Source of the DNA: Octopus sinensis
Taxonomy: Eukaryota
Direction of reading: 5' to 3'
DNA: 64,000 bases
Assembly (NCBI RefSeq): GCF_006345805.1
Contig: NC_043026.1
Location: forward strand, 12,503,579 to 12,567,578
Part shown: piece after piece, positions 19,200-62,583 of the stretch
Numbering within the stretch: the first letter of the stretch is position 1
Layout: every line of letters starts with the position of its first letter
The notes under the pieces: generated by a model
Database searches by the model: none
What the model was told of the DNA's origin: nothing
The model's input: the letters and a program-made list of their open reading frames with translations, nothing else
Translations under genes and position numbers: made by a program

Positions 19200-19258
<59 letters not shown>

Positions 19259-19456: not shown

Positions 19457-19504
<48 letters not shown>

Positions 19505-19583
19505 ATATATGTATTTATGTATATGCATGTATTTATGTATATGTATATATTTATGTATGTATATATATGTATGTATATGTTTA

Positions 19584-19625
<42 letters not shown>

Positions 19626-19648
19626 ATATGTATGTATATATATATGTA
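19190..19648. repeat. Compound (TA)/(TG) microsatellite
   Basis: Direct inspection; source of the spurious YI/CV-rich ORFs. Confidence 0.97.
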
Positions 19649-23194: not shown

Positions 23195-23554
23195 TTAAAG
23201 ACTAAAGAAAAACGTTGTATGCAACAAATATATAACTCTGTGGTAAACTACTGTGAAATATTTCTTGTGAATGGAAATTAATGGCAGCATTTCTCTACTG
23301 TGTAGTCTGCAGTATGTACAAGATGAATTTGCCTTCAGTAATTAAATTTGGATGAAGATTCAAATATGTTTGTGGCATCTTCAGATATTGATGAAAATCA
23401 GAGTTGATGGGAAAATAGCTGTAAAACATTTAAAAGAAATAAAAGATAAAAAGTGAAACAAGAAAATAAACCGTATATTGTTCTGAGAGAAGAAAACTAT
23501 TGAAGCAATGGATAATGTTACAGAGTTAAAGGATTGATTTATTATTTTGCTGAG

Positions 23555-25354
23555 ATGCAGAAAGTGACTGAAAAATCCTCATACCATTGTGGTATCTGTA
23601 AAAAATCATTTTCTCTGGAAAGTAGGCTCATTAAACACAAATGTATTGATAGAGGTGAGAAACCATATCCCTGTGATATTTGTGGTAAATCATTCTCTCA
23701 AAAAATTAGGTTACATAATCATAAACAAGTTCACATAGGAGGTAAACCATACTGTTGTGATATCTGTGGTAAATCATTCTCTCGAAGCTGTAGTTTGACT
23801 ATTCACATACGTATTCACACAGGAGAAAGACCATATGATTGTGATGTCTGTAGTAAATCATTCTCTCACTTAACCGCTTTACGTATTCACAAACGCATTC
23901 ATACAGGAGAGAAACCATATCACTGTGATATCTGTGGTGAATCATTCTCTAGAAATGATGGTCTCACTGGACATAAATGCATTCATACAGGAGAGAAGCC
24001 ATATCAGTGTGATATCTGTGGTATATCACTGTCAAAAAGTAGTAGTCTCACTAGGCATAAGCGTATTCATACAGGAGAGAAGCCATATCACTGTGATATC
24101 TGTGGTAAATCTTTCTCTGACTCTGGTCATGTAAATAAGCACAAACGTACTCATACAGGAGAGAAGCCATATCAGTGTGATATCTGTGGTAAAACATTTT
24201 CTGAATCTGGTAATGTAACCCAACACAAACGTACTCATGCACCAGAGAAGCCATATCAATGTGATATGTGTGATAAATCATTTTGTGAATCTGATGACTT
24301 AAATAAACACAAACGTACTCATACAGGAGAAAAGCCATATCAGTGTGATATCTGCGGTAAATCCTTCTCTAGACGTGATGGTCTCACTAGACATAAACAT
24401 ATTCATACACCAGAGAAGCCATATTACTGTGATATCTGTGGTACATCGTTCTTTAGGAATGATAGTCTCGCTCGACATAAACATATTCATACAGGTGAGA
24501 AGCTATATCACTGTGATATCTGTGGTAAATCATTTTCTGCTTTTGGTCACTTACATGAACACAAACGCATCCATACAGGAGAAAAACCATACCGCTGTGA
24601 TATCTGTGGTAAATCGTTTTCTAGAAGTAGTGCTCTCACTAGACATAAACGTATTCATACGGGAGAGAAGCCATATCAGTGTGATATCTGTGGCCATTCC
24701 TTTACTGAATCTGGTCATTTAAGTCAGCACAAACGTACTCATACAGGAGAAAAACAATATCGGTGTGATATCTGTGGTATATCATTTTCTGAATCTAGTC
24801 ACTTAAATAAACACAAACGTACGCATATAGGAGAAAAACAATATCGGTGTGATATCTGTGGTAAATCATTGTCTACAAATAGTGTTCTTACTAGACATAA
24901 ACGTATTCATACAGGAGAGAAGCCATATCGCTGTGATATCTGTGGTAAATCATTTACTAGAGAAAATGGTCTCACTACTCATAAACGTATTCATACAGGA
25001 GAGAAGCCATATCAGTGTGATATCTGTGGTAAATCATTCTCTGAATCTGGTCATGTAAATCTACATAAGCGTACTCATACAGGAGAAAAACCATATCAGT
25101 GTGGTATCTGCGGTAAATCATTCTCTAGACGTGATGGTCTCACTAGACATAAACATATTCATACACCAGAGAAGCCATATCAATGTGATATCTGCGGTAA
25201 ATCATTCTCTAGCAATGGTGGTCTCACTACACATAAAAGTATTCATAGAGGGGAAAAGCCCCATCACTGTGATATCTGCGGTAAATCATTCTCTAGAACT
25301 GATGGCCTCACTAGACACAAACGTATTCATACAGGTGAGAAACCATATAACTGA
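23555..25354 (+). CDS. C2H2 zinc-finger protein, 20 intact fingers plus a degenerate first finger
   Basis: ORF track 23534 starts at TTG; ATG at 23555 ([10 protein letters not shown]); ends GEKPYN* through an apparent 2-bp deletion. Confidence 0.95.
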
Positions 25355-32870: not shown

Positions 32871-32911
32871 TTGCTCCAGTTCAATCAGCTGTAGAAATCA
32901 ATTTGACCACC

Positions 32912-32912
<1 letters not shown>

Positions 32913-33004
<92 letters not shown>

Positions 33005-33054
33005 ATACATATACATATATATATACATATATATATATACATATATATATATAC

Positions 33055-33113
<59 letters not shown>

Positions 33114-33123
33114 CATATATATA

Positions 33124-33154
<31 letters not shown>

Positions 33155-33175
33155 CACATATATATATATATACAC

Positions 33176-33262
<87 letters not shown>

Positions 33263-33287
33263 CATATATATACATATATATATATAT

Positions 33288-33330
<43 letters not shown>
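32913..33330. repeat. (TA)n/(TACA) microsatellite
   Basis: Direct inspection. Confidence 0.97.
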
Positions 33331-33332
<2 letters not shown>

Positions 33333-33473: not shown

Positions 33474-33679
33474 AATGCCAGACAAATATGTTTGTGACAT
33501 CTTCAGATATTGATGAAAATCAGAGTTGATGGGAAAATAGTTGTAAAACGGTTGAAAGAAATAATTGATAAGAAGTGAAACAGAAAAATAAACCGTATAT
33601 TGTCCTGAGAGAAGAAAACTATTGAATCAATGGATAATGTTACAGACTTAAAGGATTGATTTATTATTTTGTTGAAGAG

Positions 33680-34879
33680 ATGCAAAACGAAACTGAAAAA
33701 TCCTCATACCATTGTGGTATCTGTCAAAAATCTTTTTCTCTGGAAAGTAACCTCATCAAACACAAATGTATTAAGAGAGGTGAGAAAACATATCCCTGTG
33801 ACATCTGTGGTAAATCATTCACTGCTAATCACAAGTTAACGAGACACATCCGTACTCATACAGGACAAAAACCATATCCTTGCGATGTCTGTAGCAGATC
33901 ATTCTCAGAGTTAACTGCTTTGCTTATTCACAAACGCATTCATACAGGGGAAAAACCATATCACTGTGACATCTGTGCCGAATCTTTCTCTAGAAACGAT
34001 GGTCTCATTAGACATAAATGCGTTCACACAAAAGAGAAGCCATACCAGTGTGATACCTGTGGTAAATCATTCACTGATACTAGCAACCTAACCAGACATA
34101 TCTTTATTCATACGGGAGAGAAACCATATCACTGTGACATTTGTGGTAAATCATTCTCTAGAAATAGTGATCTCACCAGACATATACGTATTCATACAGG
34201 AGAGAAGCCATATAACTGTGATGTCTGTGGTAAATCGTTCTCTGTGTCTGGACACTTAATCAAACACAAACGTATTCATACCGGAGAAAAAGCATATCAG
34301 TGTGATGTCTGTGGTAAATCATTCTACGAATCTGAATACTTGACTAAACACAAACGTACTCATACCGGAGAAAAACCATACCACTGTAATATCTGTGGTA
34401 AATCATTCTCTAGGAATGGTATATTAGCTACACACAGATGTATTCATCCAGGAGAGAATCTTTGTAAATGTGATATCTGTGGTAAATCTTTCACCGATAC
34501 TCGCAACTTAACCAGACACATCCGTATTCATACAGGAGAAAAACCATATCAGTGTGATATCTGTGATAAATCATTTGCTAGAAATGATGGTCTTATTCAT
34601 CATAAACGTATTCATGCAGGAGAGAAGCCGTATCACTGCGACATCTGTGGCAAATCTTTCTCTGAATCTGGTCACTTAACTAAACATAAACGTATTCATA
34701 CAGGAGAAAAACCATATCGCTGTGATATCTGTGGTAAATCTTTCCCTGGTACGTATGACTTAACTCAACACAAACGTATTCATACAGGAGAAAAGCCATA
34801 TCACTGTGATATCTGTGGTAAATCATTCTCGCAATCTGCCCACTTAACTAAACACAAACGTACTCATACAGGTGATTAA
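33680..34879 (+). CDS. C2H2 zinc-finger protein, 13 intact fingers plus a degenerate first finger; paralog of the 23.5-kb gene
   Basis: ATG at 33680 ([17 protein letters not shown]); shared leader and N-terminal fingers (LTAL..H; ESFSRNDGL). Confidence 0.95.
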
Positions 34880-34922
34880 CCTTATCACTGTGGTGAATAT
34901 TTTTCTGAAAATACTCATTTAA

Positions 34923-35395
34923 CCCTTTTGATACCAACCCGGCTGAAACCACCTCTGGCTCTGAGTACAAATGTCTTGTTTTCATAAGTTCTGAATTAAA
35001 TTCTTCCATCAAACTTTAGTCACAATTTATGTTCCTAACACTAGCTTAATGATAACTAAGTTATTTTACTAAATTCTTTGTTATATTTAAAATTAATTGA
35101 AAGAAACACAAATCATCTCAACAGAAATATAGTAACAAGAGGGTTAAAATATATAATAGAGAAACAATTCTTAACCCTTTCGATACCAACCTGGCTGAAA
35201 CCACCTCTGGCTCTGTAGTACAAATGTTTTGTTTTCATAAGTTTTGAATTAAATTCTTCCACCAAACTTTAGTCGCAATTTATGTTCCTAACACTAGCTG
35301 AATGATAACTAAGTTATTTTACTAAATTCTTTGTTATATCTAAAATAATTGAGAGAAACATAGAGCATCTCAAAATAAATACAGTAACGAAAGGG
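34923..35395 (-). mobile_element. piggyBac-like MITE dimer
   Basis: Units 34923-35143 and 35175-35395; TTAA TSD; same spacer. Confidence 0.9.
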
Positions 35396-35461
35396 TTAAC
35401 TAAATGTAAATGCAATCATACAGAGAAGCCATATAACTGCGATATCTGGCAAATCATTCTC

Positions 35462-37825: not shown

Positions 37826-38459
37826 CTGTGGCCTATAATCTTTACTTTTGACATCATGAAATCTAAAATCTATATAAATAAAGCTGGTTTATTCTTAAAT
37901 TATTTTTGTGTCATTTTTACATGTAGAACATTTGATCAAATCATGTTTATCCAGTCGGTAAACTTGCTCCAGCATGGCCACTGTCAAATGATTGAAACAA
38001 GTAAAAGAATTAGAAAATTACTATTATTAAATCTCAAATGAGAGATATTCAGCAACAGTACTTAGCGGTTTGGCAAAAGAGACCAATAGAATAAGTACCA
38101 GACTTCCAAAAAAATAAGTCCTGGGGTCGATTTGCTCGACTAAAAGGTGGTGCTCCAGTATGGCCACAGTCAAATGACTGAAACAAGTAAAAGAGTAAAG
38201 AGTACTTTGGAGTAAAGATTATTTGCTAACATAACATGGCAGTCCTGGTTTTAGGACAAATGTTGCTGTAATTTAGCCCCAGGAGACATCATCTCCAGCT
38301 GGACACAGATCGTGTCGTATAGCCAGCGGGAGACTCGACTAAATGCGATGCCCCAGCATGGCTACAGTCAAATGACAAACAAGTAAAAGAATATATATAC
38401 CAATATATAAAAAAACACTACACTTATATTAGATTAATCCCTTTGTTTTCAAATATAGG

Positions 38460-38840
38460 CAGACCTTAACATATCTTTTTTTCTCTGCGGCCATGCTGGA
38501 GCACCGCCTTTAATCAAGCAACTCGACCCCGGGACTTATTCTCTTGTAAGCCCAGTACTTATTCTATCAGTCTCTTTTACCGAACCGCTAAGTAAAGGGG
38601 ACATAAACACACCAGCATCGGTTGTCAAGCAATGCTAGGAGGACAAACACATATACATATATATATATATACATATATACGACGGGCTTCTTTCAGTTTC
38701 CGTCTACCAAATCCACTCACAAGGCTTTGGTCGGCCCGAGGCTATAGCAGAAGACACTTGCCCAAGATGCCGCACAGTGGGAATGAACCCAGAACCATGT
38801 GGTTGGCAAGCAAGCTACTTACCACACAGCCACTCCTGTA
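38460..38840 (-). mobile_element. SINE family B (tail fragments also at 37940-38210)
   Basis: Consensus match. Confidence 0.87.
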
Positions 38841-39252
38841 AGATACGTGTTTTTCCTATGTTTGTAACTGGTTTCAAGATATGAGATTTAACTAAAAAAA
38901 ACAAAAACAACATAACATGAAAAAATATTTTAAAAAAATTTATTAGCTTATATGTTATAATAAATGATTTGTACATATTTTCACAGGTATTTTATTTTAT
39001 TTTTGTATTTCAGAATTGGTTAAAGTCCGACAACCCAACTAAAGTTGAGGTTTTCTTTCTGTTAATTTCTTTCACCCTTTAGCATTCACATTCTTCTGTC
39101 AAATGTAGAAGACCCCCTTCGGTCATGAATGACCACGGAACTACACCAAGGAATTCCCATCAAAGGTACAAGTCCAGGCAAATTTGTTTATGGAAGACCA
39201 GCAGTCACCCATGCATACCAGCCTCCCTTCTCCATGCCATTATATGTATATA

Positions 39253-39468
39253 TATTTCTTTACTGCCCACAAGGGGCCAAACAAGGACAGACAAAGGGAT
39301 TAAGTCGATTACATCGACCCCAGTGCGTAACTGGTACTTAATTTATCGACCCCGATAGGATGAAAGGCAAAGTCGACCTCGGCGGAATTTGAAACCAGAA
39401 CGGAGCAGCAGACGAAATACGGCTACGCATTTCGCCCGGCGTGCTAACGTTTCTGCCAGCTCCCACCT
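39253..39468 (-). mobile_element. SINE family A
   Basis: Consensus match. Confidence 0.87.
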
Positions 39469-39783
39469 TATATGTATATAGGGTAAAGAACCCCTTTGGT
39501 TATGAATGGCTGTGGGGTTGCACCTAGTAAGTTCCCCTCTGAAGCAAAGGTCCAGGCAAGGTTGTTTGTGGAAGACCAGCACACGCACGCAGCTGTATAT
39601 GCATGCACTAGCATTATGACCCGGTGTTGCCAGGTCATAGTGCTAGTTCTAAATAAAAGATTTACTGCACATTTCACAATAAAACTGTCTTTACCTTCTG
39701 AGTTCAAATTCCACTGAGGTTGACTTTGCTTTTCATCTGTTTTTGGGGTCAATCAAACAAGTACTAATTGAGCACTGGGGTTG

Positions 39784-40180
39784 ATGTAATCAGTGGAGGC
39801 GCAATGGCCCAGTGGTTAGGGCAGCGGACTCGCGGTCATAGGATCGCGGTTTCGATTCCCAGACCGGGCGTTGTGAGTGTTTATTGAGCGAAAACACCTA
39901 AAAGTTCCACGAGGCTCCGGCAGGGGATGGTGGTGATCCCTGCTGTACTCTTTCACCACAACTTTCTCTCACTCTTACTTCCTGTTTCTGTTGTACCTGT
40001 ATTTCAAGGGGCCAGCCTTGTCACTCTCTGTGTCACGCTGAATATCCCCGAGAACTACGTTAAGGGTGCACGTGTCTGTGGAGTGCTCAGCCACTTACAC
40101 GTTAATTTCACGAGCAGGCTGTTCCGTTGATTCGTATCAACCGGAACCCTCATCGTCGTAACCGACGGAGTGCTTCCTTC
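39784..40180 (+). mobile_element. SINE family C, full length
   Basis: tRNA-like head to the GTAACCGACGGAGTGCTTCC tail. Confidence 0.9.
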
Positions 40181-40404
40181 TTCCCTTCCTGATGTAATCA
40201 ACTCATCCTCTCTCACAAACCAATTCATATGAAAGTACATGGGCAAAATGTTTAGCAGAGTTTGCTCTGACTCTATGTTCTGAGTTCAAATTCTGCAGAG
40301 GCTGACTTCTCCTTTCATCCTTTCAAGGTCAATAACATAAGTACCAGTAAAACACTGGGGTCGATGTAATCTTTTTACCCCATCTTGCTGGCCTTGTGCC
40401 AAAA

Positions 40405-40800
40405 TTACTCTCTTTTTACTCTTTTCAGTCATTTGACTGCGGCCATGCTGGAGCACCGCCTTTTAATCGAGCAACTCGACCCCGGGACTTATTCTTTTGT
40501 AAGCCCAGTACTTATTCTATTGGTCTCTTTTGCCGAACCGCTAAGTAACGGGGACATAAACACATCAGCATCGGTTGTCAAGCAATGCTAGGGGGGACAA
40601 ACACAGACACACAAACGCATATATATATATATATACATATATACGACGGGCTTCTTTCAGTTTCTGTCTACCAAATCCACTCACAAAGCTTTGGTCGGCC
40701 CAAGGCTATAATAGAAGACACTTGCCCAAGATGCCATGCAGTGGGACTGAACCCGGAACCATATGGTTGGTAAACAAGCTACTTACCACACAGCCACTCA
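40405..40800 (-). mobile_element. SINE family B immediately past the stop of the 40.8-kb gene
   Basis: Consensus match. Confidence 0.9.
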
Positions 40801-40813
40801 TCCACATGATTCA

Positions 40814-41704
40814 TCACGTTAGGGGTTTTTTCCCAACCTGACTACAATTGTGAATAATAAAAGATTTCTGAGCAAAATATTTGCCACACGTTTCACAGTG
40901 GAAGCGTTTTTCTCCAGAGTGTAAACTCTTATGTTTCGTTAAGATGCTGTTAGAAGAAAAAGATTTCAAACAGATTTCACAGTGAAACAACTTTTCACCA
41001 GAGTGGGTCCGTTTATGGATTGTCAGTTTAGAATTCTGGATAAAAGACTTCCCGCATATCTCACAGTGGAACTGTTTCTCCCCGGTATGACAACGTTTAT
41101 GCACCGTAAGTTTGGAATTGGTCGTAAAAGATTTACCGCACATTTCACAGTGAAACGGTTTTTCGCCCGTGTGGATTCTGACGTGGACCACAAGGTTAGC
41201 GTTATCAGAGAAGGACTTGGCACAGATTTCACAATGATATGGCTTTTCCCCGGTATGGATTCTCATGTGTTTCGTTAAACTACTGTTAGACACTAAATAC
41301 TTCCCGCATATTTCACAAGGGAACAGTTTCTCTCCCGTGTGACTACGTATATGGTTAAGAAGGTGAGAATTTTGCGTGAAGGATTTCCCGCAGATTTCAC
41401 AAAGATAGGGCCTTTCACTCGTGTGAATCCGTTTATGTCTTGTGAAGTCACTGTTATAGACGAAAGACTTGCCGCACACTTCACAGTGGAATGGTTTTTC
41501 CTTGTTGTGAATCTCCTTGTGTGTTAGAACTTCATATTCTGAAGTGAAAATTTTCCTACAAATCTCACAGCGAAATTTAGCAATATTTCTGGCAGATGAT
41601 TTCTGTTTAGTAAATGTTTCACTAAGTAAAGGCTTCTCATCACCGTCTGCCTCTGTTAATCTATCTCCATTGTTAGAAGTGTCCAAGTAATTAATGTCCT
41701 CCAT
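40814..41704 (-). CDS. C2H2 zinc-finger protein, 8 intact fingers plus a degenerate last finger; divergent CEIC-type subfamily with an acidic N-terminus
   Basis: ATG 41704; MEDINYLDTS...; CE(I/V/M)CGKSF fingers. Confidence 0.93.
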   Translation of the reverse strand: MEDINYLDTSNNGDRLTEADGDEKPLLSETFTKQKSSARNIAKFRCEICRKIFTSEYEVLTHKEIHNKEKPFHCEVCGKSFVYNSDFTRHKRIHTSERPYLCEICGKSFTQNSHLLNHIRSHTGEKLFPCEICGKYLVSNSSLTKHMRIHTGEKPYHCEICAKSFSDNANLVVHVRIHTGEKPFHCEMCGKSFTTNSKLTVHKRCHTGEKQFHCEICGKSFIQNSKLTIHKRTHSGEKLFHCEICLKSFSSNSILTKHKSLHSGEKRFHCETCGKYFAQKSFIIHNCSQVGKKPLT

Positions 41705-42350
41705 ATTATTAATTAATTAATACTCAAAGAATTCTTAAAGGTTGAGAAATTTCAGTCAGTACAATCTCTATTACAGAATAATTTGTTCATGATTCACAAA
41801 TTCATAAAAAGTTTCTCATCACCATCTGCCTCTGTTAATGTATCTCCATTGTTAAAAACAGTTGTATTAGAAGTGTCCAAGTAATTAATGTCCTCCATAT
41901 TAATTAATTAATTAATACTCAAAGAATTCTTAAAGGTTGAGAAATTTCAGTCAGTACAATCTCTATTACAGAATAGTTTGTTTATGATTCACATATTCAT
42001 AAAAAGTTTCTCATCACCATCTGCCTCTGTTAATGTATCTCCATTGTTAAAAACAGTTGTATTAGAAGTGTCCAAGTAATTAACGTCCTCCATATTAATT
42101 AATTAATTAATTAATACTCGAAGGATTCTTGAAGGTTGAGAAATGATGGTCAGTACAATCTTTATTACAGTTCAGCTTTTTTTTTGATTTACAAATTCAT
42201 AAAAAGTTTCTCCCCAATATCTGTCTCTGTTAATATATTTCCATTGTTAAGAACAGTTGTATTACAGGTATCCCGGTAATTAAAGTCTTCCGTATTAATT
42301 AATTGATACTTGAGGAATTCTGAAAGGTTGAGAAATATTAACCAGTATAA
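41630..42350 (-). repeat. Four tandem copies (194-200 bp) of a branch point/acceptor/ATG cassette
   Basis: ATG at 41704, 41898 and 42093, ACG at 42293; copies 1-3 are each preceded by G(T)ACTGAC..AATTTCTCAACCTT(T/C)AAG. Confidence 0.9.
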
Positions 42351-42364
42351 GAAATCTCTGTTAA

Positions 42365-42591
42365 CCCTTTCGTTACTGTATTTATTTTGAGATGTTCTGT
42401 GTTTCTTTCAATTACTTTAAATATAACAAAGAATTTAGTAAAATAACTTAGCTTGTAAAATAATTCAGCTTGTATTAGGAACATAAATTGTGACTAAGGT
42501 TTGGTGGAAGATTTCAATTTAAAACTTATGGAAACAAGACATTTGTACAACAGAGCCAGAGCCGGTTTCAGCTGGGTTGGTAACAAAAGGG
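42365..42591 (+). mobile_element. piggyBac-like MITE monomer
   Basis: TTAA|CCCTTTCGTTAC...AAAAGGG|TTAA. Confidence 0.88.
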
Positions 42592-43074
42592 TTAAGGTTC
42601 AGTTTGTTATTTCACATAATCATGGACTGCAGACGTGTACTTAATATACGATGTTGCTATATTTTCTTCTTACAACTTGAATACTTGTTCTCTTCTTTTT
42701 GGAACTTCTTCTCAATTGCATATTATTGTAAAACAAGAACCGTTTTACTTTGGACGTTAAAGGAACATAAGTCTGGTTGATAGATATGTCGGCTGAAAAA
42801 TGAAGAAAAAAGATTCGATAATAATTGATAATTGGTGGAAAAGTTCCTAGTAAAATCAAGAAGGGCGTAACTTTAGTATAAGTACCGGATACATTTCAAG
42901 AAAGTTTTTTATATATGGGGGGTTAGGGTTAGAGTTAAGGGTGGGAGAAAAGGGTTTCTCTTATCTCCAGAAATGTAAACAAAGTCACGTGTGTACCTAT
43001 ACCGAAGGATCGCCATCAAGAAGTCTTCCGTTAACCTGTCGTGGAAGATCAGTAAATTTTTACTATTACACTCT

Positions 43075-43478
43075 CTTTTCTCTCTTTTACTCGTTTCAGT
43101 CATTTGACTGCGGCCATGCTGGAGCACCGCCTTTAATCGAGCAACTCGACCCCAGGATTATTCTTTTTGTAAGCTCAGTACTTATTCTATCGGTCTCTTT
43201 TGCCGAACCGCTAAGTAACGGGGACATAAACACATCAACATCGGTTGTCAAGCAATGCTAGGGGGACAAACACAGACACACAAACATATACACACACACA
43301 CACATATATATATATATACGACAGGCTTCTTTCAGTTTCTGTCTACCAAATCCACTCACAAGGCATTGGTCGGCCCGGGGCTATAGCAGAAGACACTTGC
43401 CCAAGATGCCACGCAGTGGGACTGAACCCGGAACCATGTGGTTGGTTAGCAAGCTACTTACCACACAGCCACTCCTGT
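43075..43478 (-). mobile_element. SINE family B
   Basis: Consensus match. Confidence 0.9.
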
Positions 43479-43639
43479 GCCTCATTTTGAATGTAAGATG
43501 CTTGTTTTTCCTATGTCTTTTTTTGTTGTTGTTGTTAAGTCTTTTGAACGAATCTGACCGCCAGAAACCATTATGTTTTAAAGGCAAATACTTTCATACA
43601 GGTGAGACGGCAGAAGGTAGTAAAAATTATTAAAACTTC

Positions 43640-44059
43640 GGCGATCTTTCGTCTCTAGTAGACCTTTCCGTCGATTTCCGTAAAAAAATATTTTTTTTTT
43701 ACATATGGGCTTGCGGGAACTTTTGAAGTAATATACATACATATACACATACACCGAGTAAAAAATTTTAGTTATCTCTTTCTTTCACACATTACTCTGT
43801 CTCTTCACACACACTAACAGAAGCACTTCACTTACACAACATACTGTCTGTCTCCCACACCCCATCAAACACACACACACATGTACATCAATGCTTCACA
43901 TGCACGGTAACTTCAAAAGAACTTCCCTCGTCATACAATCGCTTTCTCTTAGTCTCTTTCGCTCTCATTACTTCAAAAGTTCCCGCAAGCCCATATGTAA
44001 AGAGAAAAAATTTTTTTACGGAAATCGACGGAAAGGTCTACTAAAGACGAAAGATCGCC
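43640..44059. mobile_element. MITE family M2 (opposite orientation to 6277)
   Basis: TIRs; flanks TAAAACTTC / AAAAACTTC (9 bp, 1 mismatch). Confidence 0.88.
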
Positions 44060-44197
44060 AAAAACTTCTACTACAGGTTGGAATAGAACGATTAGTTCGC
44101 AGAAATGTTAAGAAAAAAGACAGGATGGTGATGTCAAAGAATGTGTGTATGTTTTGTTTACCGAAAACATCAAGAATACACAACGTGTGGATATTAC

Positions 44198-44475
44198 TCT
44201 CTTTACTCTTTTACTTGTTTCAGTCATTTGACTGCGGCCATGCTGGAGCACCGCCTTTAGTCGACCAAATCGACCCCGGGACTTATTCTTTGTAAGCCAA
44301 GTACTTATTCTATTGGTCTCTTTTGCCGAACCGCTAAGTGACGGGGACGTAAACACACCAGCATCGGTTGTCAAGCAATGCTAGGGCGACAAACACAGAC
44401 ACACAAACACATACACACACATACATATATATATATACATATATACGACAGGCTTCTTTCAGTTTCCGTCTACCA
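44198..44475 (-). mobile_element. SINE family B, partial
   Basis: Consensus match. Confidence 0.85.
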
Positions 44476-50665: not shown

Positions 50666-51062
50666 AGGCGCAGGAGTGGCTGTGTGGTAAGTAGCTTGCT
50701 AACCAACCACATGGTTCCGGGTTCAGTCCCACTGCGTGGCATCTTGGGCAAGTGTCTTCTGCTATAGCCCCGGGCCGACCAATGCCTTGTGAGTGGATTT
50801 GGTAGACGGAAACTGAAGGAAGCTCGTCGTATATATGTATATATATATATGTATGTGTGTGTGTTTGTCCCCCTAGCATTGCTTGTCAAACGATGCTGGT
50901 ATGTTTATGTCCCCGTTACTTGGCGGTTCGGCAAAAGAGACCGATAGAACAAGTACTGGGCTTACAAAAAGAATAAGTCCCGGGGTCGAGTTGCTCGATT
51001 AAAGGCGGTGCTCCAGCATGGCCACAGTCAAATGACTGAAACAAGTAAAAGAGTAAAAAGAG
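50666..51062 (+). mobile_element. SINE family B
   Basis: Consensus match. Confidence 0.9.
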
Positions 51063-51309
51063 TATATATTTTCCACAAGATCTTAGACCCCCCCTTGGAG
51101 TAAACATCCTGACCAACTACAAAAGAAACCAGCAAAACAATTTTTTCTTCTTCCCTCTCTCCCTTTTCTTCCTTCAATTCTTTATCTTTAACACCTTTTT
51201 CAGATACAAAAACACACACGCACACATGCTCTCTCTCACTTTCTCCCCATTCACCACCCTCTTGTACTATCTTATATCCCTCCCCACCACTACACACTCA
51301 GTGACACTA

Positions 51310-51695
51310 TCTCTCTCTATATAAACGGCAGTTTGTCTGTGCGTGTTTCTGTGTGTCTGTTTTCTCGTACCCTCACTCTGACCACGGCTTTCAACCGATT
51401 CTGATGAAACTTGACACACACATAGCCCAATGTCATAATTCAAAACTAACGCAGCGAAAATTTTGAAAAGTTCCCCCAGTTCTGAAAAAAATCGATAAAT
51501 TCGACATGGGGGTCGAGAATCAGAAACCCAAACCACAGACTGTCTAGGGGACGCAACTCCACCTTTTTTAACTCTCAAAAAAAATTTACCATAATTTTTT
51601 TTCCATTTTTTTGCTACTTTTTGGCTATAACTCTCTAAAAATGCTTTATAGTTATTTCCCTTACAAACCTGAGCAACGCCGGGCGATACTGCTAG
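51310..51695 (+). mobile_element. Helitron-like family H3
   Basis: A|TCTCTCTCTATATAAACGGCAG head; same 3' end as H2. Confidence 0.85.
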
Positions 51696-51809
51696 TAACA
51701 CTATAAAATTGTCAAAATTTTTCCACAGGAACTTGTCATATGTTCTAACCACTGCACCATGTACCTTCATTGTGTAATGAAAGGAAGAGAAAAAAAGTTA
51801 TACTTTACG

Positions 51810-52212
51810 CTTCTACTTGTTTCAGTCATTTGACTGCGGCCATGCTGGGGCACCGCCCTTTAGTCGAGCAACTCGACCCCTGGACTTATTCTTTGTAAGC
51901 CCAGTCCGTATTCTATCAGTCTTTTTTGCCGAACCGCTAATTGACGGGGACGTAAACACACCAGCATCGGTTGTCAAGCAATGCTAGGGGGACAAACACA
52001 GACACACAAACATACACACACACACACTTATATATATATACATATATACGACAGGCTTCTTTCAGTTTCCGTCTACCAAATCCACTCACAAGGCATTGGT
52101 CGGCCCGGGGCTATAGCAGAAGACACTTGCCCAAGATGTCACGCAGTGGGACTGAACCCGGAACCATGTGGTTGGTTAGCAAGCTACTTACCACACAGCC
52201 ACTCCTGCGCCT
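51810..52212 (-). mobile_element. SINE family B
   Basis: Consensus match. Confidence 0.9.
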
Positions 52213-52225
52213 TATATTGCATCTT

Positions 52226-52790
52226 ATCATCATCATCATCGTTTAACGTCCGCTTTCCATGCTAGCATGGGTTGGACAGTTCAACTGGGGTCTGGGGAGC
52301 CCGAAGGCTGCACCAGGCCAGTCAGATCTGGCAGTGTTTCTACAGCTGGATGCCCTTCCTAGCGCCAACCACTCCGAGAGTGTAGTGGGTGATTTATGTG
52401 CCACCGACACAGGTGCCAGACGAGGCTGGCGAACGGCCACGCTCGGATGGTGTTTTTTTTATGTGCCACTGACACAGGTGCCAGACGAGGCTGGCAGACG
52501 GCCACGCTCGGATGGTGTTTTTTATGTGCCACCGACACAGGTGCCAGACGAAGCTGGCGAATGGCCACGCTCGGATGGTGTTTTTTTTATGTGCCACTGA
52601 CACAGGTGCCAGACGAAGCTGGCGAACGGCCATGATCGGATGGTGTTTGTTACGTGCCCACAGCACGGAGGCCAGTCGATGCGGTACTGGCTACGGCCAC
52701 GTTCGGATGGTTTTCTTATGTGCCACCGGCACTGGTACCACAAGGATACAAATTCCATTGATGTTCATCTATTTTGATTTGGTTGTCTAT
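52226..52790 (-). mobile_element. SINE family D with an expanded 62-65 bp internal subrepeat (x4)
   Basis: GTGCCAC.GACACAGGTGCCAGACGA.GCTGGC..A.GGCCA.GCTCGGATGGTGTTTTT repeated at about 52399-52650. Confidence 0.88.
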
Positions 52791-52867
52791 CATAATTTCT
52801 GTCACTTGCTGTTTTTAGCAGTCTTTGAGTTTCTTAGTATTTCACATTTGTATCTTTACTATTTAAA

Positions 52868-52902
52868 TATCTTATACTGTTTTTTTCTTCTTCTTATTTC
52901 AG
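52868..52902 (+). promoter_or_regulatory. Putative 3' splice acceptor of the 53.9-kb gene (exon begins at 52903)
   Basis: TATCTTATACTGTTTTTTTCTTCTTCTTATTTCAG, the same family motif. Confidence 0.68.
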
Positions 52903-53007
52903 ATTATTGGATTATATTTGCAATTAAAGGATTATTCACATCAGACACAGTTATATTTATCATGTTTTGAAGATGAAAAGAAAAATGTTTGAATGAAGAT
53001 ATTAACA

Positions 53008-53172
53008 TGTTGGAGTGGTTGGCATTAGGAAGGGCATCCAGCTGTAGAAACATTGCCAGATAAGACTGGAGCCTGGTGCAGCCTTCTGGCTTCCCAGATC
53101 CCCGGTCGAACCATCCAACCCATACTAGCATGGAGAACGGACGTTAAACGATGATGGTGATGATGATGATGA
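53008..53172 (+). mobile_element. SINE family D 3' part in the leader
   Basis: Core and (GAT)n tail. Confidence 0.83.
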
Positions 53173-53469
53173 TATCAGTCTGTGGTGAATTAAGCTGAAA
53201 TGTTTCTTCTAAACTGTGATAAGCAAAAATGCATTCCTTAACATTTTCTGCAATATCACCAGAGGGTGAGCTTGCAATCTAACTGGAAATATTTATAAAT
53301 GCATTTGCAGCATCTTAAGATATTGACGAAGATCACAGGTGATGGAAATATACATCAGTGAAAGTATTTTTTAAGGAATGAAACGATAAAACTGGAAACC
53401 AGAAATATAACAATATACCTTCATGAGAAAAATATTAATAATGGAAAAACTGAATCAAGAAATTTATAT

Positions 53470-53887
53470 ACTCTTTACTCTCCTTTACTCTTTTACTTGT
53501 TTCAGTCATTTGACTGCGGCCATGCTGGAGCACCGCCTTTTAGTCGAGCAACTCGACCCCGGGACTTATTCTTTTTTGTAAGCTCAGTACTTATTCTATC
53601 AGTCTCTCTTTTTGCCGAACCGCTAAGTGACAGGGGACGTAAACACACCAGCATCGGTTGTCAAGCAATGCTAGGGGAACAAACACAGACACACAAACGC
53701 ACACCCATACATATATATATATACGACAGGCTTCTTTCAGTTTCCATCTACCAAATCCACTCACAAGGCATTGGTCGGTCCGGACTATAGCAGAAGACAC
53801 TTGCCCAAGGTGCCACGCAGTGGGACTGAACCCGGAACCATGTGGTTGGTTAGCAAGCTACTTACCACACAGCCACTCCTGCGCCTA
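53470..53887 (-). mobile_element. SINE family B ending about 31 nt before the ATG
   Basis: Consensus match. Confidence 0.9.
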
Positions 53888-53903
53888 TGAGTGATTTTTT
53901 TAA

Positions 53904-54779
<876 letters not shown>

Positions 54780-54869
54780 CTGTATTAATAATCCTTTATA
54801 TTTTAGGCACAGGGCCGGAAATTTTTGTTGACCAGGGTACAGTTGATTACATCGATCCTCATGCTTAAC

Positions 54870-55520
54870 TGCTTTTTGCGTGCCACTGGCACAGAAGCCA
54901 GTCAGGGCAGCGCTTGCATCAGCCATGTTCGAATGGTGCTTTCTACGTGCCGCCGGCACAGATATCACAATTACAATTTCCATTTGATATTTATTTTTAT
55001 GGCGTTAGGAAGGGGCATCCAGCCGTAGAAACATTGCCAGATCAGACTGGAGCCTGGTGCAGCCTCCTAGCTTCCCAGACCCCAGTTGAACCATCCAACC
55101 TATGCTAGCATGGAAAGCGGACGCTAAATGATGATGATGATGTTGATGTACTTGACACAATAGGTCTCCTCAAGCACAGCAGGTCACGTGCCACCGGCAC
55201 AGAAGCCAGTCAAGGCGATGCTGGCATCGGCCACGTTCGGATGGTGCTTTTTAAGTGCCGCTGGCACAGGTATCACAACTACAATTTCCATTTGATATTT
55301 ATTTTGATGTTGTTGTACTTGACTCAATAGGTCTCCTCAAGCACAGCAGGTCACGTGCCACCGGCACAGAAGCCAGTTAAGGTGGCGCTGGCATCGGCCA
55401 TATTCGGATGGTGCTTTCTATGTACCGCCGGCACAAATATCACAACTACAATTTCCATTTGATATTTATTTTGATGTTGATGTACTTGACTCAATAGGTC
55501 TCCTCAAGCACAGCAGGTGG
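54870..55520. mobile_element. Mosaic of SINE-D pieces: about 167-bp tandem units (minus) around a plus-strand 3' end (55000-55140)
   Basis: Repeated GTACTTGAC.CAATAGGTCTCCTCAAGCACAGCAGG at about 55149, 55315 and 55482. Confidence 0.78.
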
Positions 55521-55799
55521 CCCTACGATCCAAGGCAAGCACAGCGGGTCGTTCTGCAATCCAAGGTACTTCGAATGGGCTGGGGCTGCTATATGAAACT
55601 GGTGCAGGAAGCAGCCATGAACTCACATTATTTGTCGGGTCTATACATGTTATTTATATTCTAGATCTTATATATGCTTCTTTCATAAATCTCATATGTA
55701 TATTCTGAAATAAAATATTATTAAGTCTATCCCATCAATGAAATGACTCTGTTGTTATATTTTGCTTGTTTCAGTCATTAGACTGTGATTATGATACAG

Positions 55800-56690
55800 A
55801 AGTTGAGTGTCGGTTTTTCAGAGTTGCGGTGATGATATTGTGAGCTAAATTTTGTTATTGAAAATTGTTATTTTGGACGTTTTATTGATTGTTGAATTTT
55901 TGAAAACTGTTTTCCTGCTGCCGCCCACTGTTGGCTATGCAAGCTGTGACTTACGCGCGAGCAGCAGGTAAAAGCCTCTCTGCCGATGCGATGCAGTTGA
56001 AGGATGTAAAAATTGAAAAAAAAAACCTGGAAAAATATTTTGAGAGTTTTAAAAAAGAAGGAGACTGCCTGAGAATCATATCGCCGAAAGACGCAGTACA
56101 AAAAGCAGGGAAAAAAAACCCATCACCTACAGAACGTGGAATGTAGCCACAAAGAGAATTGAAGTGGCAGAAATAGAGGATATAGAGCAGTGTCTAGAAG
56201 AGATAAAGGACAGGACCACCTTTTACACAAGAGGGAGGAAGTATGCCACGGTAGAAGTACGTTTTGAAAGCGAAGAAGCGAGTAGACACGCCACAACAGC
56301 ACTGAAAACAACTAGGTGGGTACTCCTACCTACATACTGCAGTAGATGAGCTGCGAGAATTAGAATTGGAAAAGTGTCGCCGGAAATGGACATGGAAAGG
56401 CTGGTAGCAGCCATAATATATAATTGCAAAGAAAAGGTGGATATCCTTAAAGTAGAGAAGTCTAGAGATATTAACTGGTGGGGTTATGGAGTTGAAGCTT
56501 TATTACACAAAACCCTGCCAGATTTGCATAACATTTCAGAGTAGTTGGTGCTCCTCGAGAGTTGTGGTGGAGGGGAGACCTCCAGTATGCTATAAGTGCA
56601 AAAGCAGAGGGCACATAAAGGCAATGTGTCCTCTAAGAGAATTGCATGTAGAAGAGATGACTCAATGAGAGACGAAGAAGCAGAGAGGAT
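55800..56690 (+). mobile_element. Degenerate gag-like ORF1 of a non-LTR (Tx1/L1-like) retrotransposon with a CCHC knuckle; 5' portion only
   Basis: Frameshifted pieces 55931-56146, 56164-56349 and 56486-56668; GRPPVCYKCKSRGHIKAMCP = CX2CX4HX4C. Confidence 0.78.
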
Positions 56691-56942
56691 TAGGGTTAGA
56701 GCAATCCCTGCTGTACTCATTCGCCACAACTTTCTCTCACTATTTCTTCTGTTGGCCTGCTTGCTTAGCCAGTGAGGTGGTGTCATTTGAAGACTAAAAC
56801 AATGCGAAGCGCATTGTGACCAGAGATGTGTAGCAACATCTGAGAGCCTGGTCGGTCACAGTGACCACGGTGATAAATGTATGTATGTATATATATATAA
56901 CTACAAGATATTATAACAATAAATTTACATATTATGATATAT

Positions 56943-57235
56943 GTGGAGGTGCAATGGCCCAGTGGTTAGGGCAGCGGACTTGCGGTTTCGATTCCCAGAC
57001 CAGGCGCTGTGAGTGTTTATTGAGCGAAAACACCTAAAAGCTCCACGAGGCTCCGGCAGGGGGAGGTGATCCCTGCTGTACTCCTTCACCACTCTTTCTC
57101 ACACTCTTTCCTCTGTTGGCCTGCTCGCTTAGCCAGCGGGGTGGCGTCATTCGAAGGCTAAAACAATGCGAACGCATTGTGACCAGCGATGTGTAACAAC
57201 ATCTGATGGTCTGGTCGGTCACGTGATCACGTGAT
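56943..57235 (+). mobile_element. SINE-C head with an alternative tail (tail also at 56700-56875)
   Basis: Same head as 39784, diverging after CTCTTTC into CTGTTGGCCTGCTCGCTTAGCC...GTGATCACGTGAT. Confidence 0.82.
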
Positions 57236-57284
57236 TATGATATATTAAATACATTATAATATGGGTGGCTATTTATTTATGCGC

Positions 57285-57558
57285 CCTTTTCAAGCTTAGC
57301 CAGGCTCATGGGCCCGGTTTCCCGGTTTCTGTGGGGTATGTGCTCCCCCCAGCTGGACTGGACGCCAGTCTATCGCAGCATTACCCAAGAAACAGGAAGT
57401 AAGAGTGAGAGAAAGAATATAACAGGGGTCGCCACCACCCCCTGCTGGAGCCTCGTGGAGCTTTTTAGGTGTTTTCGCTCAATAAACACAGAACACCCGG
57501 TTTGGGAATCGAACTGTGAGTCCGCTGCCCTAACCACTGGGCCATTGCGCCTCCACAT
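57285..57558 (-). mobile_element. SINE-C head with a third tail type (tail alone at 7815-7905)
   Basis: GCCCTTTTCAAGC.TAG.CAGGCTCATGGGCCCGG...CCCCCAGCTGGAC.GGACGCCAGTC. Confidence 0.78.
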
Positions 57559-57883
57559 GGGTGGCTATAGCGATTAAAAACCAAACAGGTAAAATACATG
57601 AATAAGGGTGAAAAATAGCACCAGTAATTGCTAGAAATAGGAGCTAAAAAATGTAACTCGAATAGCCAGGCAAAATCACCAGCCTCATGAGATGTTCAGG
57701 AACTGCGAAAGGAAAGCCACGTCTTCCTCCAGCGAGATAAAACTCACTGAATGAAGTACTAGCATCTGTGCAGGTTGTTCAGCAAAAAATTGTGAAATCC
57801 TCATCTGATGTCTGCGACAGGAGAATCCACAGTAATCTTTATAATTAGACCAACACATGATTTGATTACATGCTCTACATGTA

Positions 57884-59175: not shown

Positions 59176-59440
59176 ACATATGTAAATTAATATTTACTGT
59201 TAAATCATAATATTGTATAATAGGAATAACAAAAAAAAAGTAGGAAGTGAGCTGGCAGAATCATTAGCACACTGGGAAAAATGCTTAGCTGTATTTCATC
59301 CATCAATGTTCTGAGTTCCAACTCTACCTTTCATCCTTTAAGGGGCAATAAAATAAATACGAGTTGAAAACTGGGGTTGATGTAATCAACTTACTCCTTC
59401 CCTCAAATTGCTAGCCTTGTACCAAAATGTGGAACCAGTA

Positions 59441-60085
59441 TCTCTATATATATAAACGGCAAAATGTCTGTCTGTGTGTGTGTCCTTTATACAAATCCAC
59501 AATTTTTCAGTTAGAGGGCTCGCACTTTCTATGGTCATTCAAAACCGTCCAAGGGTGGTCGTGCACATCTTTACATTTCCCCAGTCACCCCGCAAATCTC
59601 TCTATATATAAATGGCAAAATGTCTGTGTGTGTGTCCTTTATACAAATCCACAATTTTTCAGTTTGAGGGCTCGCACTTTCTATGGTCATTCAAAATCGT
59701 CCAAGGGTGGTCGTGCACATCTTTACATTTCCCCAGTTACCCCGCAAATCTCTCTATATATAAACGGCAAAATGTCTGTGTGTGTGTCCTTTATACAAAT
59801 CCACAATTTTTCAGTTAGAGGGCTCGCACTTTCTATGGTCATTCAAAACCGTCCAAGGGTGGTCGTGCACATCTTTACATTTCTCCAGTCACCCCGCAAA
59901 GCCATTAAAAAATCAATAGAAGATTTTTTTGTGAATTTTCTATTCAAAACCCAATCAAAATGCCCGAAACTTGATACGCCAATTGAATGCCTGCTAGCTG
60001 TATGTGGTTGGTCGGAGATTTGGACAGTACTCGCGTGTATGTACACACACACGCAGCTGTATATGCATGCACTAGCACTATCTAG
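59441..60085 (+). mobile_element. Helitron-like element with a triplicated 5' head (152-156 bp period)
   Basis: TCTCT(CT)ATATATA(T)AAA(C/T)GGCAAAATG at 59441, 59597 and 59749; ends CTAG|T with the hairpin deleted. Confidence 0.8.
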
Positions 60086-62490: not shown

Positions 62491-62583
62491 TGGCATAATT
62501 TCGTTATATCTATACTCCACAACCCATGGAAGTGAAATGTCTCGACCTTGTTGAGCTATATCAAAGGAATGCCTTCTTTCTTA

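What the first reader, a model, noticed from the sequence alone, without database searches (positions are those of the whole stretch)
41630..42350. Four-fold tandem cassette of branch point, 3' splice site and start codon: a possible splice-controlled uORF dial
Seen (minus strand): copies 1-3 read G(T)ACTGAC..AATTTCTCAACCTT(T/C)AAG|AAT...ATTAAT ATG GAG GAC (A/G)TT AAT TAC. Copy 1 (ATG 41704, 15-bp deletion) opens the ZNF. Copies 2 and 3 (41898, 42093) encode near-identical 34-aa peptides MED(I/V)NYLDTSNTTVFNNGDTLTEADGDEKLFMN(L/M)* that mimic the protein's own N-terminus. Copy 4 has ACG. Inference: the acceptor chosen sets whether 0, 1 or 2 strong uORFs precede the CDS, tuning translation or NMD, and may release N-terminal decoy micropeptides. 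Copy number could vary between individuals.
Basis: partly seen in the sequence, partly recalled or inferred. Interest (0 to 1): 0.75.

Follow-up and report, generated by a model that had tools for sequence, protein, structure and literature searches.

The report
Duplicated gene start in octopus zinc-finger gene
A 195-base piece holding the intron end, splice acceptor and start codon of an octopus zinc-finger gene has been copied head-to-tail four times, most likely as a neutral by-product of unequal recombination in a repeat-rich genome rather than as an evolved translation dial.

Summary
On the minus strand, a 195-bp unit is repeated in tandem. Each unit holds a branch-point-like TACTGAC, a pyrimidine tract, an AG, a (TTAA)n leader, an ATG and 30 codons. 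Copy 1 opens a 296-aa C2H2 zinc-finger ORF. Copies 2 and 3 give the stated 34-aa ORFs. Copy 4 has ACG.

The array is larger than reported. It has four complete units spanning 41628-42623, and a 235-bp TTAA-flanked MITE (42361-42595) splits the oldest unit.

The window is Octopus sinensis (CM016888.1, about 12.50-12.57 Mb), inside a zinc-finger gene cluster.

Two distant relatives share the N-terminal leader joined to finger 1, so ATG 41704 is the true start. One relative carries a single cassette, so this array is specific to this locus.

Identity between copies is mosaic, as expected from unequal crossover at the (TTAA)n tract. Copy 4 looks neutral: 15-25% diverged in every segment, ATG and branch point lost, MITE inserted, dN/dS 0.73 on 16 changes.

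About 13 similar short tandem arrays lie in the same 64 kb.

The acceptors of copies 1 and 2 are sequence-identical, so uORF-carrying isoforms are physically plausible. No RNA data could be reached, and nothing supports a selected "dial" or decoy peptides.

The parts
41628..42623 (-). Whole tandem array. Four complete 195-bp units, with a MITE insertion in the oldest one. After removing the MITE the length is about 765 bp, which is 4 x 195 minus the 15-bp deletion in copy 1.
41628..41805 (-). Unit 1, joined to the zinc fingers. It holds TACTGAC 41761-41755, the AAG acceptor ending at 41734, a (TTAA)n leader, and ATG 41704. The 15-bp in-frame deletion is a derived state. Unit homology ends at ...GAGAAGCCTTT.
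   Evidence: relatives keep the 5 deleted codons
41806..42000 (-). Unit 2. It holds TACTGAC 41956-41950, the AAG acceptor ending at 41929, and ATG 41898. Its 34-codon ORF is 41794-41898, and the stop lies 4 codons past the duplication junction, inside unit 1. From 40 nt upstream of the AG to the ATG it is identical to unit 1, apart from one base in the TTAA run.
42001..42200 (-). Unit 3. It holds TACTGAC 42155-42149, the TTCAAG acceptor ending at 42128, and ATG 42093. Its 34-codon ORF is 41989-42093. The coding part differs from unit 2 at 1 of 86 positions; the intron and leader part differs at 8 of 70.
42201..42360 (-). Unit 4, the oldest, 3' part. The branch-point motif has decayed to TACTGGT, the acceptor is TTTCAG ending at 42320, and ACG at 42293 replaces the ATG. 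It is 15-25% diverged in every segment.
42596..42623 (-). Unit 4, 5' part (ATGATTATGTGAAATAACAAACTGAACC), separated from the rest of the unit by the MITE. It marks the left edge of the array.
42361..42595 (.). 235-bp MITE with TTAA at both ends and terminal inverted repeats TTAACCCTTT(T/C)GTTAC (15 of 16 matched). It inserted 41 nt upstream of the unit-4 AG. Nine other full-length copies lie in the window.
40814..41704 (-). 296-aa C2H2 zinc-finger ORF. A 45-aa acidic leader is followed by about 9 fingers, and the last finger is degenerate.
41752..41790 (-). Extra 12-codon ORF (MNKLFCNRDCTD*) between the unit-2 ORF and the main ATG. It would be present in any mRNA spliced at an upstream acceptor.
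41705..41721 (-). The (TTAA)n run just upstream of the main ATG. The same run lies at 41901-41916 and 42096-42115 in units 2 and 3. It places stop codons in all three frames and varies in length between units. It is the likely crossover point.
   Evidence: direct reading of the sequence

Best explanation
This is a young tandem array, specific to this locus and similar to a minisatellite. The original 195-bp segment covered the last ~75 nt of an intron (branch point, pyrimidine tract, AG), a ~30-nt leader with a (TTAA)n run, and the ATG with the first 30 codons of a lineage-specific Octopus sinensis C2H2 zinc-finger gene. It was duplicated head-to-tail and then expanded to four units. At least one step was an unequal crossover with its breakpoint in or near the (TTAA)n tract.

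Only unit 1 is joined to the fingers. In units 2-4 the truncated coding part runs into former intron sequence and stops 4 codons past the junction, which creates the 34-codon ORFs.

The upstream units are passengers that evolve neutrally. Depending on which acceptor is used, they are either intronic or 5'-UTR ballast.

The acceptor cassettes of units 1 and 2 are sequence-identical, and unit 4 has the most consensus-like AG. I therefore infer that some transcripts are spliced upstream and carry one or two 34-codon uORFs plus a 12-codon uORF. That would lower translation of this one paralogue as a tolerated side effect, not as a tuned dial.

Shown: the anatomy, the phasing, the mosaic identity, the decay of unit 4, the MITE insertion, and the homology of the leader. 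Inferred: the unequal-crossover mechanism, neutrality, and any use of the upstream acceptors.
For: - Four complete, in-register units appear once the MITE is removed.
- Identity between units is mosaic. For units 1 and 2, the intron and leader parts differ at 0 of 69 positions and the coding parts at 2 of 71. For units 2 and 3, the coding parts differ at 1 of 86 and the intron and leader parts at 8 of 70. This is the pattern expected from a crossover between misaligned units at the leader/CDS boundary.
- The (TTAA)n run at that boundary varies in length between units.
- Unit 4 is 15-25% diverged in every segment. It has ATG>ACG and TACTGAC>TACTGGT, carries a MITE insertion, and has dN/dS 0.73 against units 2 and 3 from 4 synonymous and 12 non-synonymous changes. 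About 3.3 synonymous changes are expected under neutrality.
- The array is not a family feature. The paralogue L003 has one cassette and no tandem repeat. P0045 has a different internal duplication of 187 aa.
- Thirteen other non-zinc-finger tandem arrays with periods of 61-252 bp and 2-5 copies cover about 9% of the same 64 kb.
- The leader is real coding sequence. Among 1.84 billion representative proteins, the only phmmer hit to it is P0045, at E 9e-7, with the leader joined to finger 1. The only indel in a coding part is the in-frame 15-bp deletion in unit 1.
Against: - No transcript evidence could be reached, so acceptor use and even expression are unknown.
- The coding parts of units 1-3 are more alike (3 of 71 positions differ) than their intron and leader parts (about 14% differ). 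This could reflect gene conversion or weak constraint rather than history alone.
- Units 2 and 3 keep an intact branch point, AG, strong-context ATG and open frame, which is also what a selected device would look like.
- The acceptor matrix I used is generic and written from memory. It was not trained on octopus.
Confidence: 0.6

Rival explanations
1. The array is a selected regulatory device. Regulated choice among the tandem acceptors sets how many strong uORFs precede the zinc-finger ORF and so tunes translation or mRNA decay. The uORF peptides may act as N-terminal decoys.
For: The cassettes of units 1-3 are intact, with strong start contexts at all three ATGs. The acceptors of units 1 and 2 are identical, so both should be recognised. 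The (TTAA)n run closes all three frames before each ATG, which forces discrete ORFs. Control of uORF inclusion by splicing or by start-site choice is a known mode of regulation (10.1101/813840; 10.1101/2024.04.25.591216).
Against: No relative keeps the array. The oldest unit has lost its ATG and branch point, carries a MITE, and has dN/dS 0.73, not distinguishable from 1. The intact state of units 2 and 3 is explained by 0-3% divergence since the last event. No protein resembling the 34-aa peptides is on record. Nothing is known about the function of the leader: Pfam finds no domain in residues 1-45.
Confidence: 0.12
2. The locus is a silent or decaying paralogue, a pseudogene in the making. 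Neither the upstream units nor ATG 41704 appear in a stable mRNA, and the array is plain junk DNA at a dead gene's 5' end.
For: The 296-aa product is not on record for an assembly whose neighbouring genes are on record. No annotated protein shares its N-terminal 99 aa. The last finger is degenerate (HCETCGKYFAQKSFIIHNC...). The relative L003 is itself frame-shifted after finger 1.
Against: The frame is open for 296 codons with about 9 recognisable fingers. The only indel in the unit-1 coding part is in-frame (15 bp). Within the 24 shared codons, the differences between unit 1 and unit 2 are 2 synonymous and 1 non-synonymous. Absence from an annotation is weak evidence.
Confidence: 0.2
3. The upstream units are alternative cassette exons. 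Each would run from AAG|AAT to TTT|GTGAAT (about 131 nt), be spliced in series or exclusively, and give N-terminal protein variants, as in classical tandem exon duplication.
For: A GTGAAT or GTAAAT lies 8 nt past each duplication junction.
Against: These donors score only at the 61st-79th percentile of all GTs in the window. They lie in former intron sequence. Any read-through from one unit into the next meets stop codons in all three frames in the (TTAA)n run. The units duplicate only the 5' part of an exon, not a whole exon.
Confidence: 0.03
4. Assembly artefact: a single cassette wrongly expanded in a long-read assembly.
For: None specific. Tandem repeats are a known weak point of assemblies.
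Against: The units differ by 4.5-23% and by several indels, and one carries a MITE insertion. Artefactual expansion gives near-identical copies.
Confidence: 0.03

Closest known systems
Tandem exon duplication giving alternative or mutually exclusive exons (reviewed in PMC9013439; PMC9741552)
   Same: A local head-to-tail duplication of a gene segment that includes a 3' splice site. It creates competing, near-identical acceptors.
   Different: Only the intron end and the first 30 codons of the exon were copied. There is no matching donor, and the copies end in a stop 4 codons past the junction. They cannot substitute for one another in the protein, so the outcome would be uORFs rather than protein isoforms.
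uORF inclusion controlled by 5'-leader splicing or by start-site choice (for example phyB-induced intron retention in the PIF3 leader, 10.1101/813840; TSS-dependent uORF inclusion, 10.1101/2024.04.25.591216)
   Same: If upstream acceptors are used, the leader gains strong-context uORFs that should reduce translation of the main ORF.
   Different: Here the uORFs are recent paralogues of the main ORF's own start, made by duplication. No isoform data and no conservation support regulation.
Minisatellites and VNTRs expanded by unequal crossing-over (established knowledge)
   Same: Head-to-tail units, a mosaic register-shifted identity pattern, a microsatellite at the inferred breakpoint, and many similar arrays nearby.
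   Different: The unit is unique genic sequence spanning a splice acceptor and a start codon, not a transposon fragment or anonymous DNA. Copy-number polymorphism was not tested.
Cephalopod C2H2 zinc-finger gene expansions (PMC12513265)
   Same: The gene sits in a cluster of six C2H2 zinc-finger ORFs in 64 kb of the O. sinensis genome.
   Different: This paralogue belongs to a small sub-group with its own acidic leader (MED.NYLDTSN...). Only two other sequences with that leader were found, in libraries of 1.84 and 5.8 billion proteins.

Membership tests
Minisatellite-like tandem array formed by unequal crossing-over | Head-to-tail units in one register, well beyond chance | tested here: met
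   TRF period 195, score 975. Four complete units after re-phasing. blastn E 1e-43 to 1e-75.
Minisatellite-like tandem array formed by unequal crossing-over | Mosaic identity between neighbouring units, consistent with a crossover between misaligned units | tested here: met
   Intron and leader parts of units 1 and 2 differ at 0 of 69 positions. Coding parts of units 2 and 3 differ at 1 of 86. The reciprocal comparisons differ at 2 of 71 and 8 of 70.
Minisatellite-like tandem array formed by unequal crossing-over | Copy number varies between individuals | not testable with these tools
   Only one assembly was reachable.
Tandem exon duplication with alternative or mutually exclusive use | A whole exon is duplicated with both splice sites | tested here: not met
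   The unit is an intron end plus the 5' part of an exon. The candidate donors GTGAAT and GTAAAT are weak, at the 61st-79th percentile.
Tandem exon duplication with alternative or mutually exclusive use | Copies are interchangeable in frame | tested here: not met
   Units 2-4 stop 4 codons past the junction, and the (TTAA)n run closes all three frames.
Splicing-gated uORF regulation | A strong-context AUG uORF lies in sequence that can be included in or left out of the leader | tested here: inconclusive
   The ATGs have A at -3 and G at +4, and acceptors lie upstream of each. Whether any upstream unit is exonic is unknown.
Splicing-gated uORF regulation | Alternative isoforms are observed | not testable with these tools
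   No RNA data. Exact look-ups of the 296-aa and 34-aa products found nothing.
Splicing-gated uORF regulation | The uORF is conserved in relatives or under purifying selection | tested here: not met
   L003 has a single cassette. dN/dS for unit 4 against units 2 and 3 is 0.73, not distinguishable from 1, and unit 4 has lost its ATG.
C2H2 zinc-finger protein gene | An array of C2H2 fingers with TGEKP-type linkers | tested here: met
   Pfam zf-C2H2 E 1.6e-43 and zf-H2C2_2 E 1.1e-58.
TTAA-specific (piggyBac-like) MITE | TTAA target duplication, terminal inverted repeats, and many copies | tested here: met
   TTAA at both ends, inverted repeats matching at 15 of 16 positions, and 10 full-length copies at 83-89% identity in the window. 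Assignment to the piggyBac superfamily is my inference from the TTAA and CCC termini only.

The most novel reading that the evidence does not exclude
The array is a heritable translational rheostat whose copy number varies. The spliceosome chooses among near-identical acceptor cassettes, and each upstream choice adds a strong 34-codon uORF cloned from the gene's own start. Unequal crossover at the (TTAA)n tract adds or removes steps, giving rapid and reversible tuning of the dosage of one lineage-specific zinc-finger transcription factor.
Probability: 0.08. Interest if true: 0.6.

Novelty: new member of a known kind. Interest (0 to 1): 0.25.

Why it matters
If the ordinary reading holds, this is a clean small example of how unequal recombination in a repeat-rich cephalopod genome can clone a gene's own splice acceptor and start codon. 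That creates strong uORFs from nothing, and it shows one way young zinc-finger paralogues may be dampened or lost. It also warns annotators that the first ATG cassette met in such loci need not be the one joined to the coding body. If the acceptors turn out to be used differentially, the locus would be a natural minigene series for studying competition between identical 3' splice sites 195 nt apart. It would also show duplication-born uORFs acting as a dosage control.

Tried and rejected
- **Whole-protein homologue search.** It was swamped by vertebrate zinc-finger proteins and was uninformative.
- **Word-indexed search with the N-terminal 99 aa.** It found no candidates.
- **Exact-product look-ups.** Nothing was on record for the 296-aa ORF, the two 34-aa ORFs, two other zinc-finger ORFs or P0045. 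Only the neighbour at 53919-54779 was on record, and that hit identified the assembly.
- **Metagenome scan with P0045.** It returned only distant zinc-finger proteins at 26-47% identity, with no source contig.
- **Paper search for SRR11869391.** It found nothing, so the species behind L003 is unknown.
- **The true acceptor is the CAG at 41603 (tttactaaacag|AAATCA), making all four cassettes intronic.** Rejected. P0045 and P0121 encode the leader joined to finger 1, and the site scores only at the 80th percentile.
- **Cassette-exon reading.** Rejected because the donors are weak and stops lie in all three frames.
- **Higher conservation of the coding parts as evidence for selection on the peptides.** Rejected. 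The staggered-crossover history accounts for the near-identity of the unit 2 and unit 3 coding parts, and unit 4 shows no such contrast. A smaller contrast across units 1-3 remains unexplained and is listed as evidence against the best explanation.
- **The invariant 13-nt ATTTCTCAACCTT block as evidence for constraint.** Rejected. By my own estimate, a perfect run of about 17 nt is expected by chance in about 170 nt at 82% identity, and the longest perfect run is actually in the tail segment.

Full report
**1. What is in the sequence**

Tandem Repeats Finder reports a 195-bp period, 3.4 copies, 88% matches and score 975 at 41673-42336. blastn of one unit against the whole window finds only the four local copies (E 1e-43 to 1e-75) and nothing else in 64 kb. 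This is a local duplication of unique sequence, not an interspersed repeat.

The landmarks are as follows:
- TACTGAC lies at 41761, 41956 and 42155. Copy 4 has TACTGGT.
- ATTTCTCAACCTT(T/C)AAG ends at 41734, 41929 and 42128. Copy 4 has TTTCAG ending at 42320.
- ATG lies at 41704, 41898 and 42093. Copy 4 has ACG at 42293.
- ATG 41704 opens a 296-aa ORF (40814-41704). Pfam recognises it as a multi-finger C2H2 protein: zf-C2H2 E 1.6e-43 and zf-H2C2_2 E 1.1e-58.

**2. Where it comes from**

The neighbouring ORF 53919-54779 is an annotated 286-aa gene on NCBI GCA_006345805.1, record CM016888.1. The fetched locus is 100% identical to window 50919-57779. The window is therefore about CM016888.1:12,503,579-12,567,578. 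A paper identifies that accession as the Octopus sinensis assembly (10.1101/2023.05.16.540928).

The window holds six C2H2 zinc-finger ORFs, which fits the known cephalopod C2H2 expansions (PMC12513265). The neighbour at 60854 (minus strand) is annotated as a gene whose span runs on upstream beyond the fetched locus, with a 345-aa product. That fits a multi-exon gene with upstream exons, so upstream exons spliced onto a zinc-finger exon are plausible here.

**3. Re-phasing the array**

Directly upstream of copy 4 lies a 235-bp element (42361-42595). It has TTAA at both ends and terminal inverted repeats TTAACCCTTT(T/C)GTTAC. Nine other full-length copies at 83-89% identity lie in the window. 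It is a MITE.

Upstream of the MITE, the sequence 42623-42596 (ATGATTATGTGAAATAACAAACTGAACC) continues the unit homology exactly where collinearity predicts. The local alignment alone is only marginal: score 29, against a shuffle mean of 21.2, s.d. 2.8 and maximum 29. With the MITE taken out, the four units align end to end.

Units start with ATGA[AT]T[AT]TGT[GA]AA at 42623, 42200, 42000 and 41805. The array is therefore four complete units spanning 41628-42623. Its length without the MITE is about 765 bp, which is 4 x 195 minus the 15-bp deletion in copy 1.

The original duplicated segment held:
- about 75 nt of intron 3' end;
- the AG;
- a leader of about 30 nt containing a (TTAA)n run;
- the ATG and 30 codons.

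The junction reads ...GAGAAACTTTTT|ATGAATTTGTGA. The uORF stop codons therefore lie four codons past the junction, in what was intron sequence.

**4. Is copy 1 the real start, and are the acceptors real?**

A phmmer search of the 45-aa leader against 1.84 billion representative proteins gave one hit, P0045 (E 9e-7). Its sequence begins MENVDRLNTSNTIVLNDTDTVRETDGDEETVNGEVFTKERSLQGNIAEYRCDVCRK. This aligns with the leader and runs straight into finger 1.

A profile search found one more relative, P0121, encoded on the Logan contig L003. Both relatives keep the five codons that copy 1 lacks. The 15-bp deletion is therefore derived, and the upstream copies preserve the older state.

The (TTAA)n run puts stop codons in all three frames just before each ATG (direct reading). 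No N-terminal extension is possible.

In L003 the ATG is preceded by TGTACTCAT, then 21 nt, then AG, then 9 nt. The window units have TGTACTGAC, then 21 nt, then AG. The motif and its spacing to the AG are shared even though the intervening bases differ (read by eye). This supports a real branch point and acceptor just upstream of the start codon in this sub-family.

I also considered a rival acceptor, the CAG at 41603, which would make every cassette intronic. It scores at the 80th percentile, and the contiguous leader-finger coding in the relatives contradicts it.

**5. History**

Divergence by segment is mosaic:

| Comparison | Intron end + leader | Coding part |
|---|---|---|
| Units 1 vs 2 | 0 of 69 differ | 2 of 71 differ |
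| Units 2 vs 3 | 8 of 70 differ | 1 of 86 differ |

This is the pattern expected if an unequal crossover between misaligned units, with its breakpoint at the leader/CDS boundary, produced unit 2. Unit 2 would then be a hybrid of unit 1's 5' part and unit 3's coding part. The (TTAA)n microsatellite sits at that boundary and differs in length between units.

Unit 4 is 15-25% diverged in every segment. At least three events are needed, and the last one is recent: about 2% divergence over the 194 bp it copied.

P0045 carries its own, different internal duplication of 187 aa, with halves that are 86% identical. L003 has no tandem array. Duplication at the 5' end may therefore recur in this sub-family, but the 195-bp array is specific to this locus.

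**6. Tests for function**

- **Peptide constraint.** Nei-Gojobori counts for unit 4 against units 2 and 3 give 4 synonymous and 12 non-synonymous changes, dN/dS 0.73. About 3.3 synonymous changes are expected under neutrality, so this is not distinguishable from 1. Units 1-3 differ by too few changes to say anything.
- **Decay.** Unit 4 has lost its ATG and its branch-point A, and has taken a MITE 41 nt upstream of its AG.
- **Background.** Thirteen other non-zinc-finger tandem arrays with periods of 61-252 bp and 2-5 copies cover about 9% of this window. With six gene starts in the window, one of them lying in such an array is not surprising.
- **Splice-site strength.** I used a generic acceptor matrix with values from memory, so this is indicative only. 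Unit 4's CAG ranks at the 97.7th percentile of all 7208 AGs in the window. The AAG sites of units 1-3 rank at the 82nd-86th percentile, and a TAG 34 nt upstream in units 1 and 2 at about the 87.5th.
- **Donors.** The GTGAAT and GTAAAT sites after each junction rank at the 61st-79th percentile. The cassette-exon reading is therefore weak.
- **Start contexts.** All three ATGs have A at -3 and G at +4. An mRNA spliced upstream would also carry a 12-codon ORF, 41790-41752.

**7. What could not be tested**

No transcript data were reachable.
- The 296-aa product and both 34-aa peptides are not on record in the collection of gene calls.
- No annotated protein shares words with the N-terminal 99 aa.
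- The gene therefore appears unannotated in the collections searched, which is weak evidence for low or no expression.
- A metagenome scan gave only distant zinc-finger proteins.

**8. Verdict**

The most likely explanation is a neutral array, similar to a minisatellite and grown by unequal crossover, that happens to span the acceptor and start codon of a young zinc-finger paralogue (confidence 0.6).

The acceptor cassettes of units 1 and 2 are identical from 40 nt upstream of the AG to the ATG. The spliceosome cannot tell them apart by local sequence. Some upstream splicing, and so some uORF-bearing mRNA, is a reasonable inference. I read it as a side effect that dampens this paralogue, not as an evolved dial.

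The rivals are:
- a silent or decaying paralogue (0.2);
- the cassette-exon reading (0.03);
- an assembly artefact (0.03).

Splicing-gated or start-site-gated uORF inclusion and tandem exon duplication are both known. This locus meets the sequence preconditions of the first, fails the defining features of the second, and fits a tandem array formed by unequal crossover.

Noticed in passing
window 1847-2579, 8905-9385, 10124-10595, 34919-35399, 42361-42595: A 235-bp TTAA-flanked MITE family with termini TTAACCCTTT...AAAGGGTTAA has 10 full-length copies in 64 kb. Nine of the ten sit in head-to-tail pairs or triplets with a period of about 242-252 bp (element plus a spacer of about 17-24 bp). Only the copy inside the array is solo. 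The tandem arrangement of a MITE is unusual and unexplained.
   Followed up: partly
P0045 (metaclust protein, 332 aa), residues 1-187 vs 188-332: The only clear relative of the leader carries its own internal tandem duplication: leader plus about 4 fingers plus an open 44-aa junction. The halves are 86% identical, and the first 69 aa differ at one position. Its source contig could not be found.
   Followed up: partly
L003 (Logan SRR11869391 contig, 916 bp) 634-916: A paralogue or orthologue of the leader-bearing zinc-finger gene, with a Cys-to-Phe change in finger 1 (YRFEIC) and a frameshift before finger 2. It is either a pseudogene or an assembly error. Its species is unknown.
   Followed up: no
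window 38000-44300 and elsewhere (for example 38027-38186, 40385-40591, 42941-43261, 43891-44295): A SINE-like interspersed repeat recurs many times on both strands. Its spurious translations contain ...SFDCGHAGAPP... and ...MLQHGRSQMTE.SK.... It flanks the zinc-finger gene on both sides.
   Followed up: no
window 19132-19777 and 32885-33332: Long (TA)n and (TATG/TACA)-type microsatellite tracts of 400-650 bp generate long spurious ORFs made of Y/I/H/T runs.
   Followed up: no
window 42920-42942: A short interstitial telomere-like run, (GGGTTA) x 3.7, lies about 300 bp upstream of the array on the minus-strand gene's 5' side.
   Followed up: no
window 23534-23560 and 33656-33685: Two plus-strand zinc-finger paralogues share near-identical upstream sequence ending ...ttgatttattattttg(c/t)tga(g/a)... 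around their ATG. This may be a splice acceptor, which would mean their coding sequence begins in an upstream exon, unlike the gene studied here. Neither product is on record.
   Followed up: no
window 12495-12973, 18344-18895, 59440-59900, 62582-63501: Further high-identity (91-95%) tandem arrays with periods of 112-185 bp and 3-5 copies. Short tandem arrays cover roughly a tenth of this window.
   Followed up: partly
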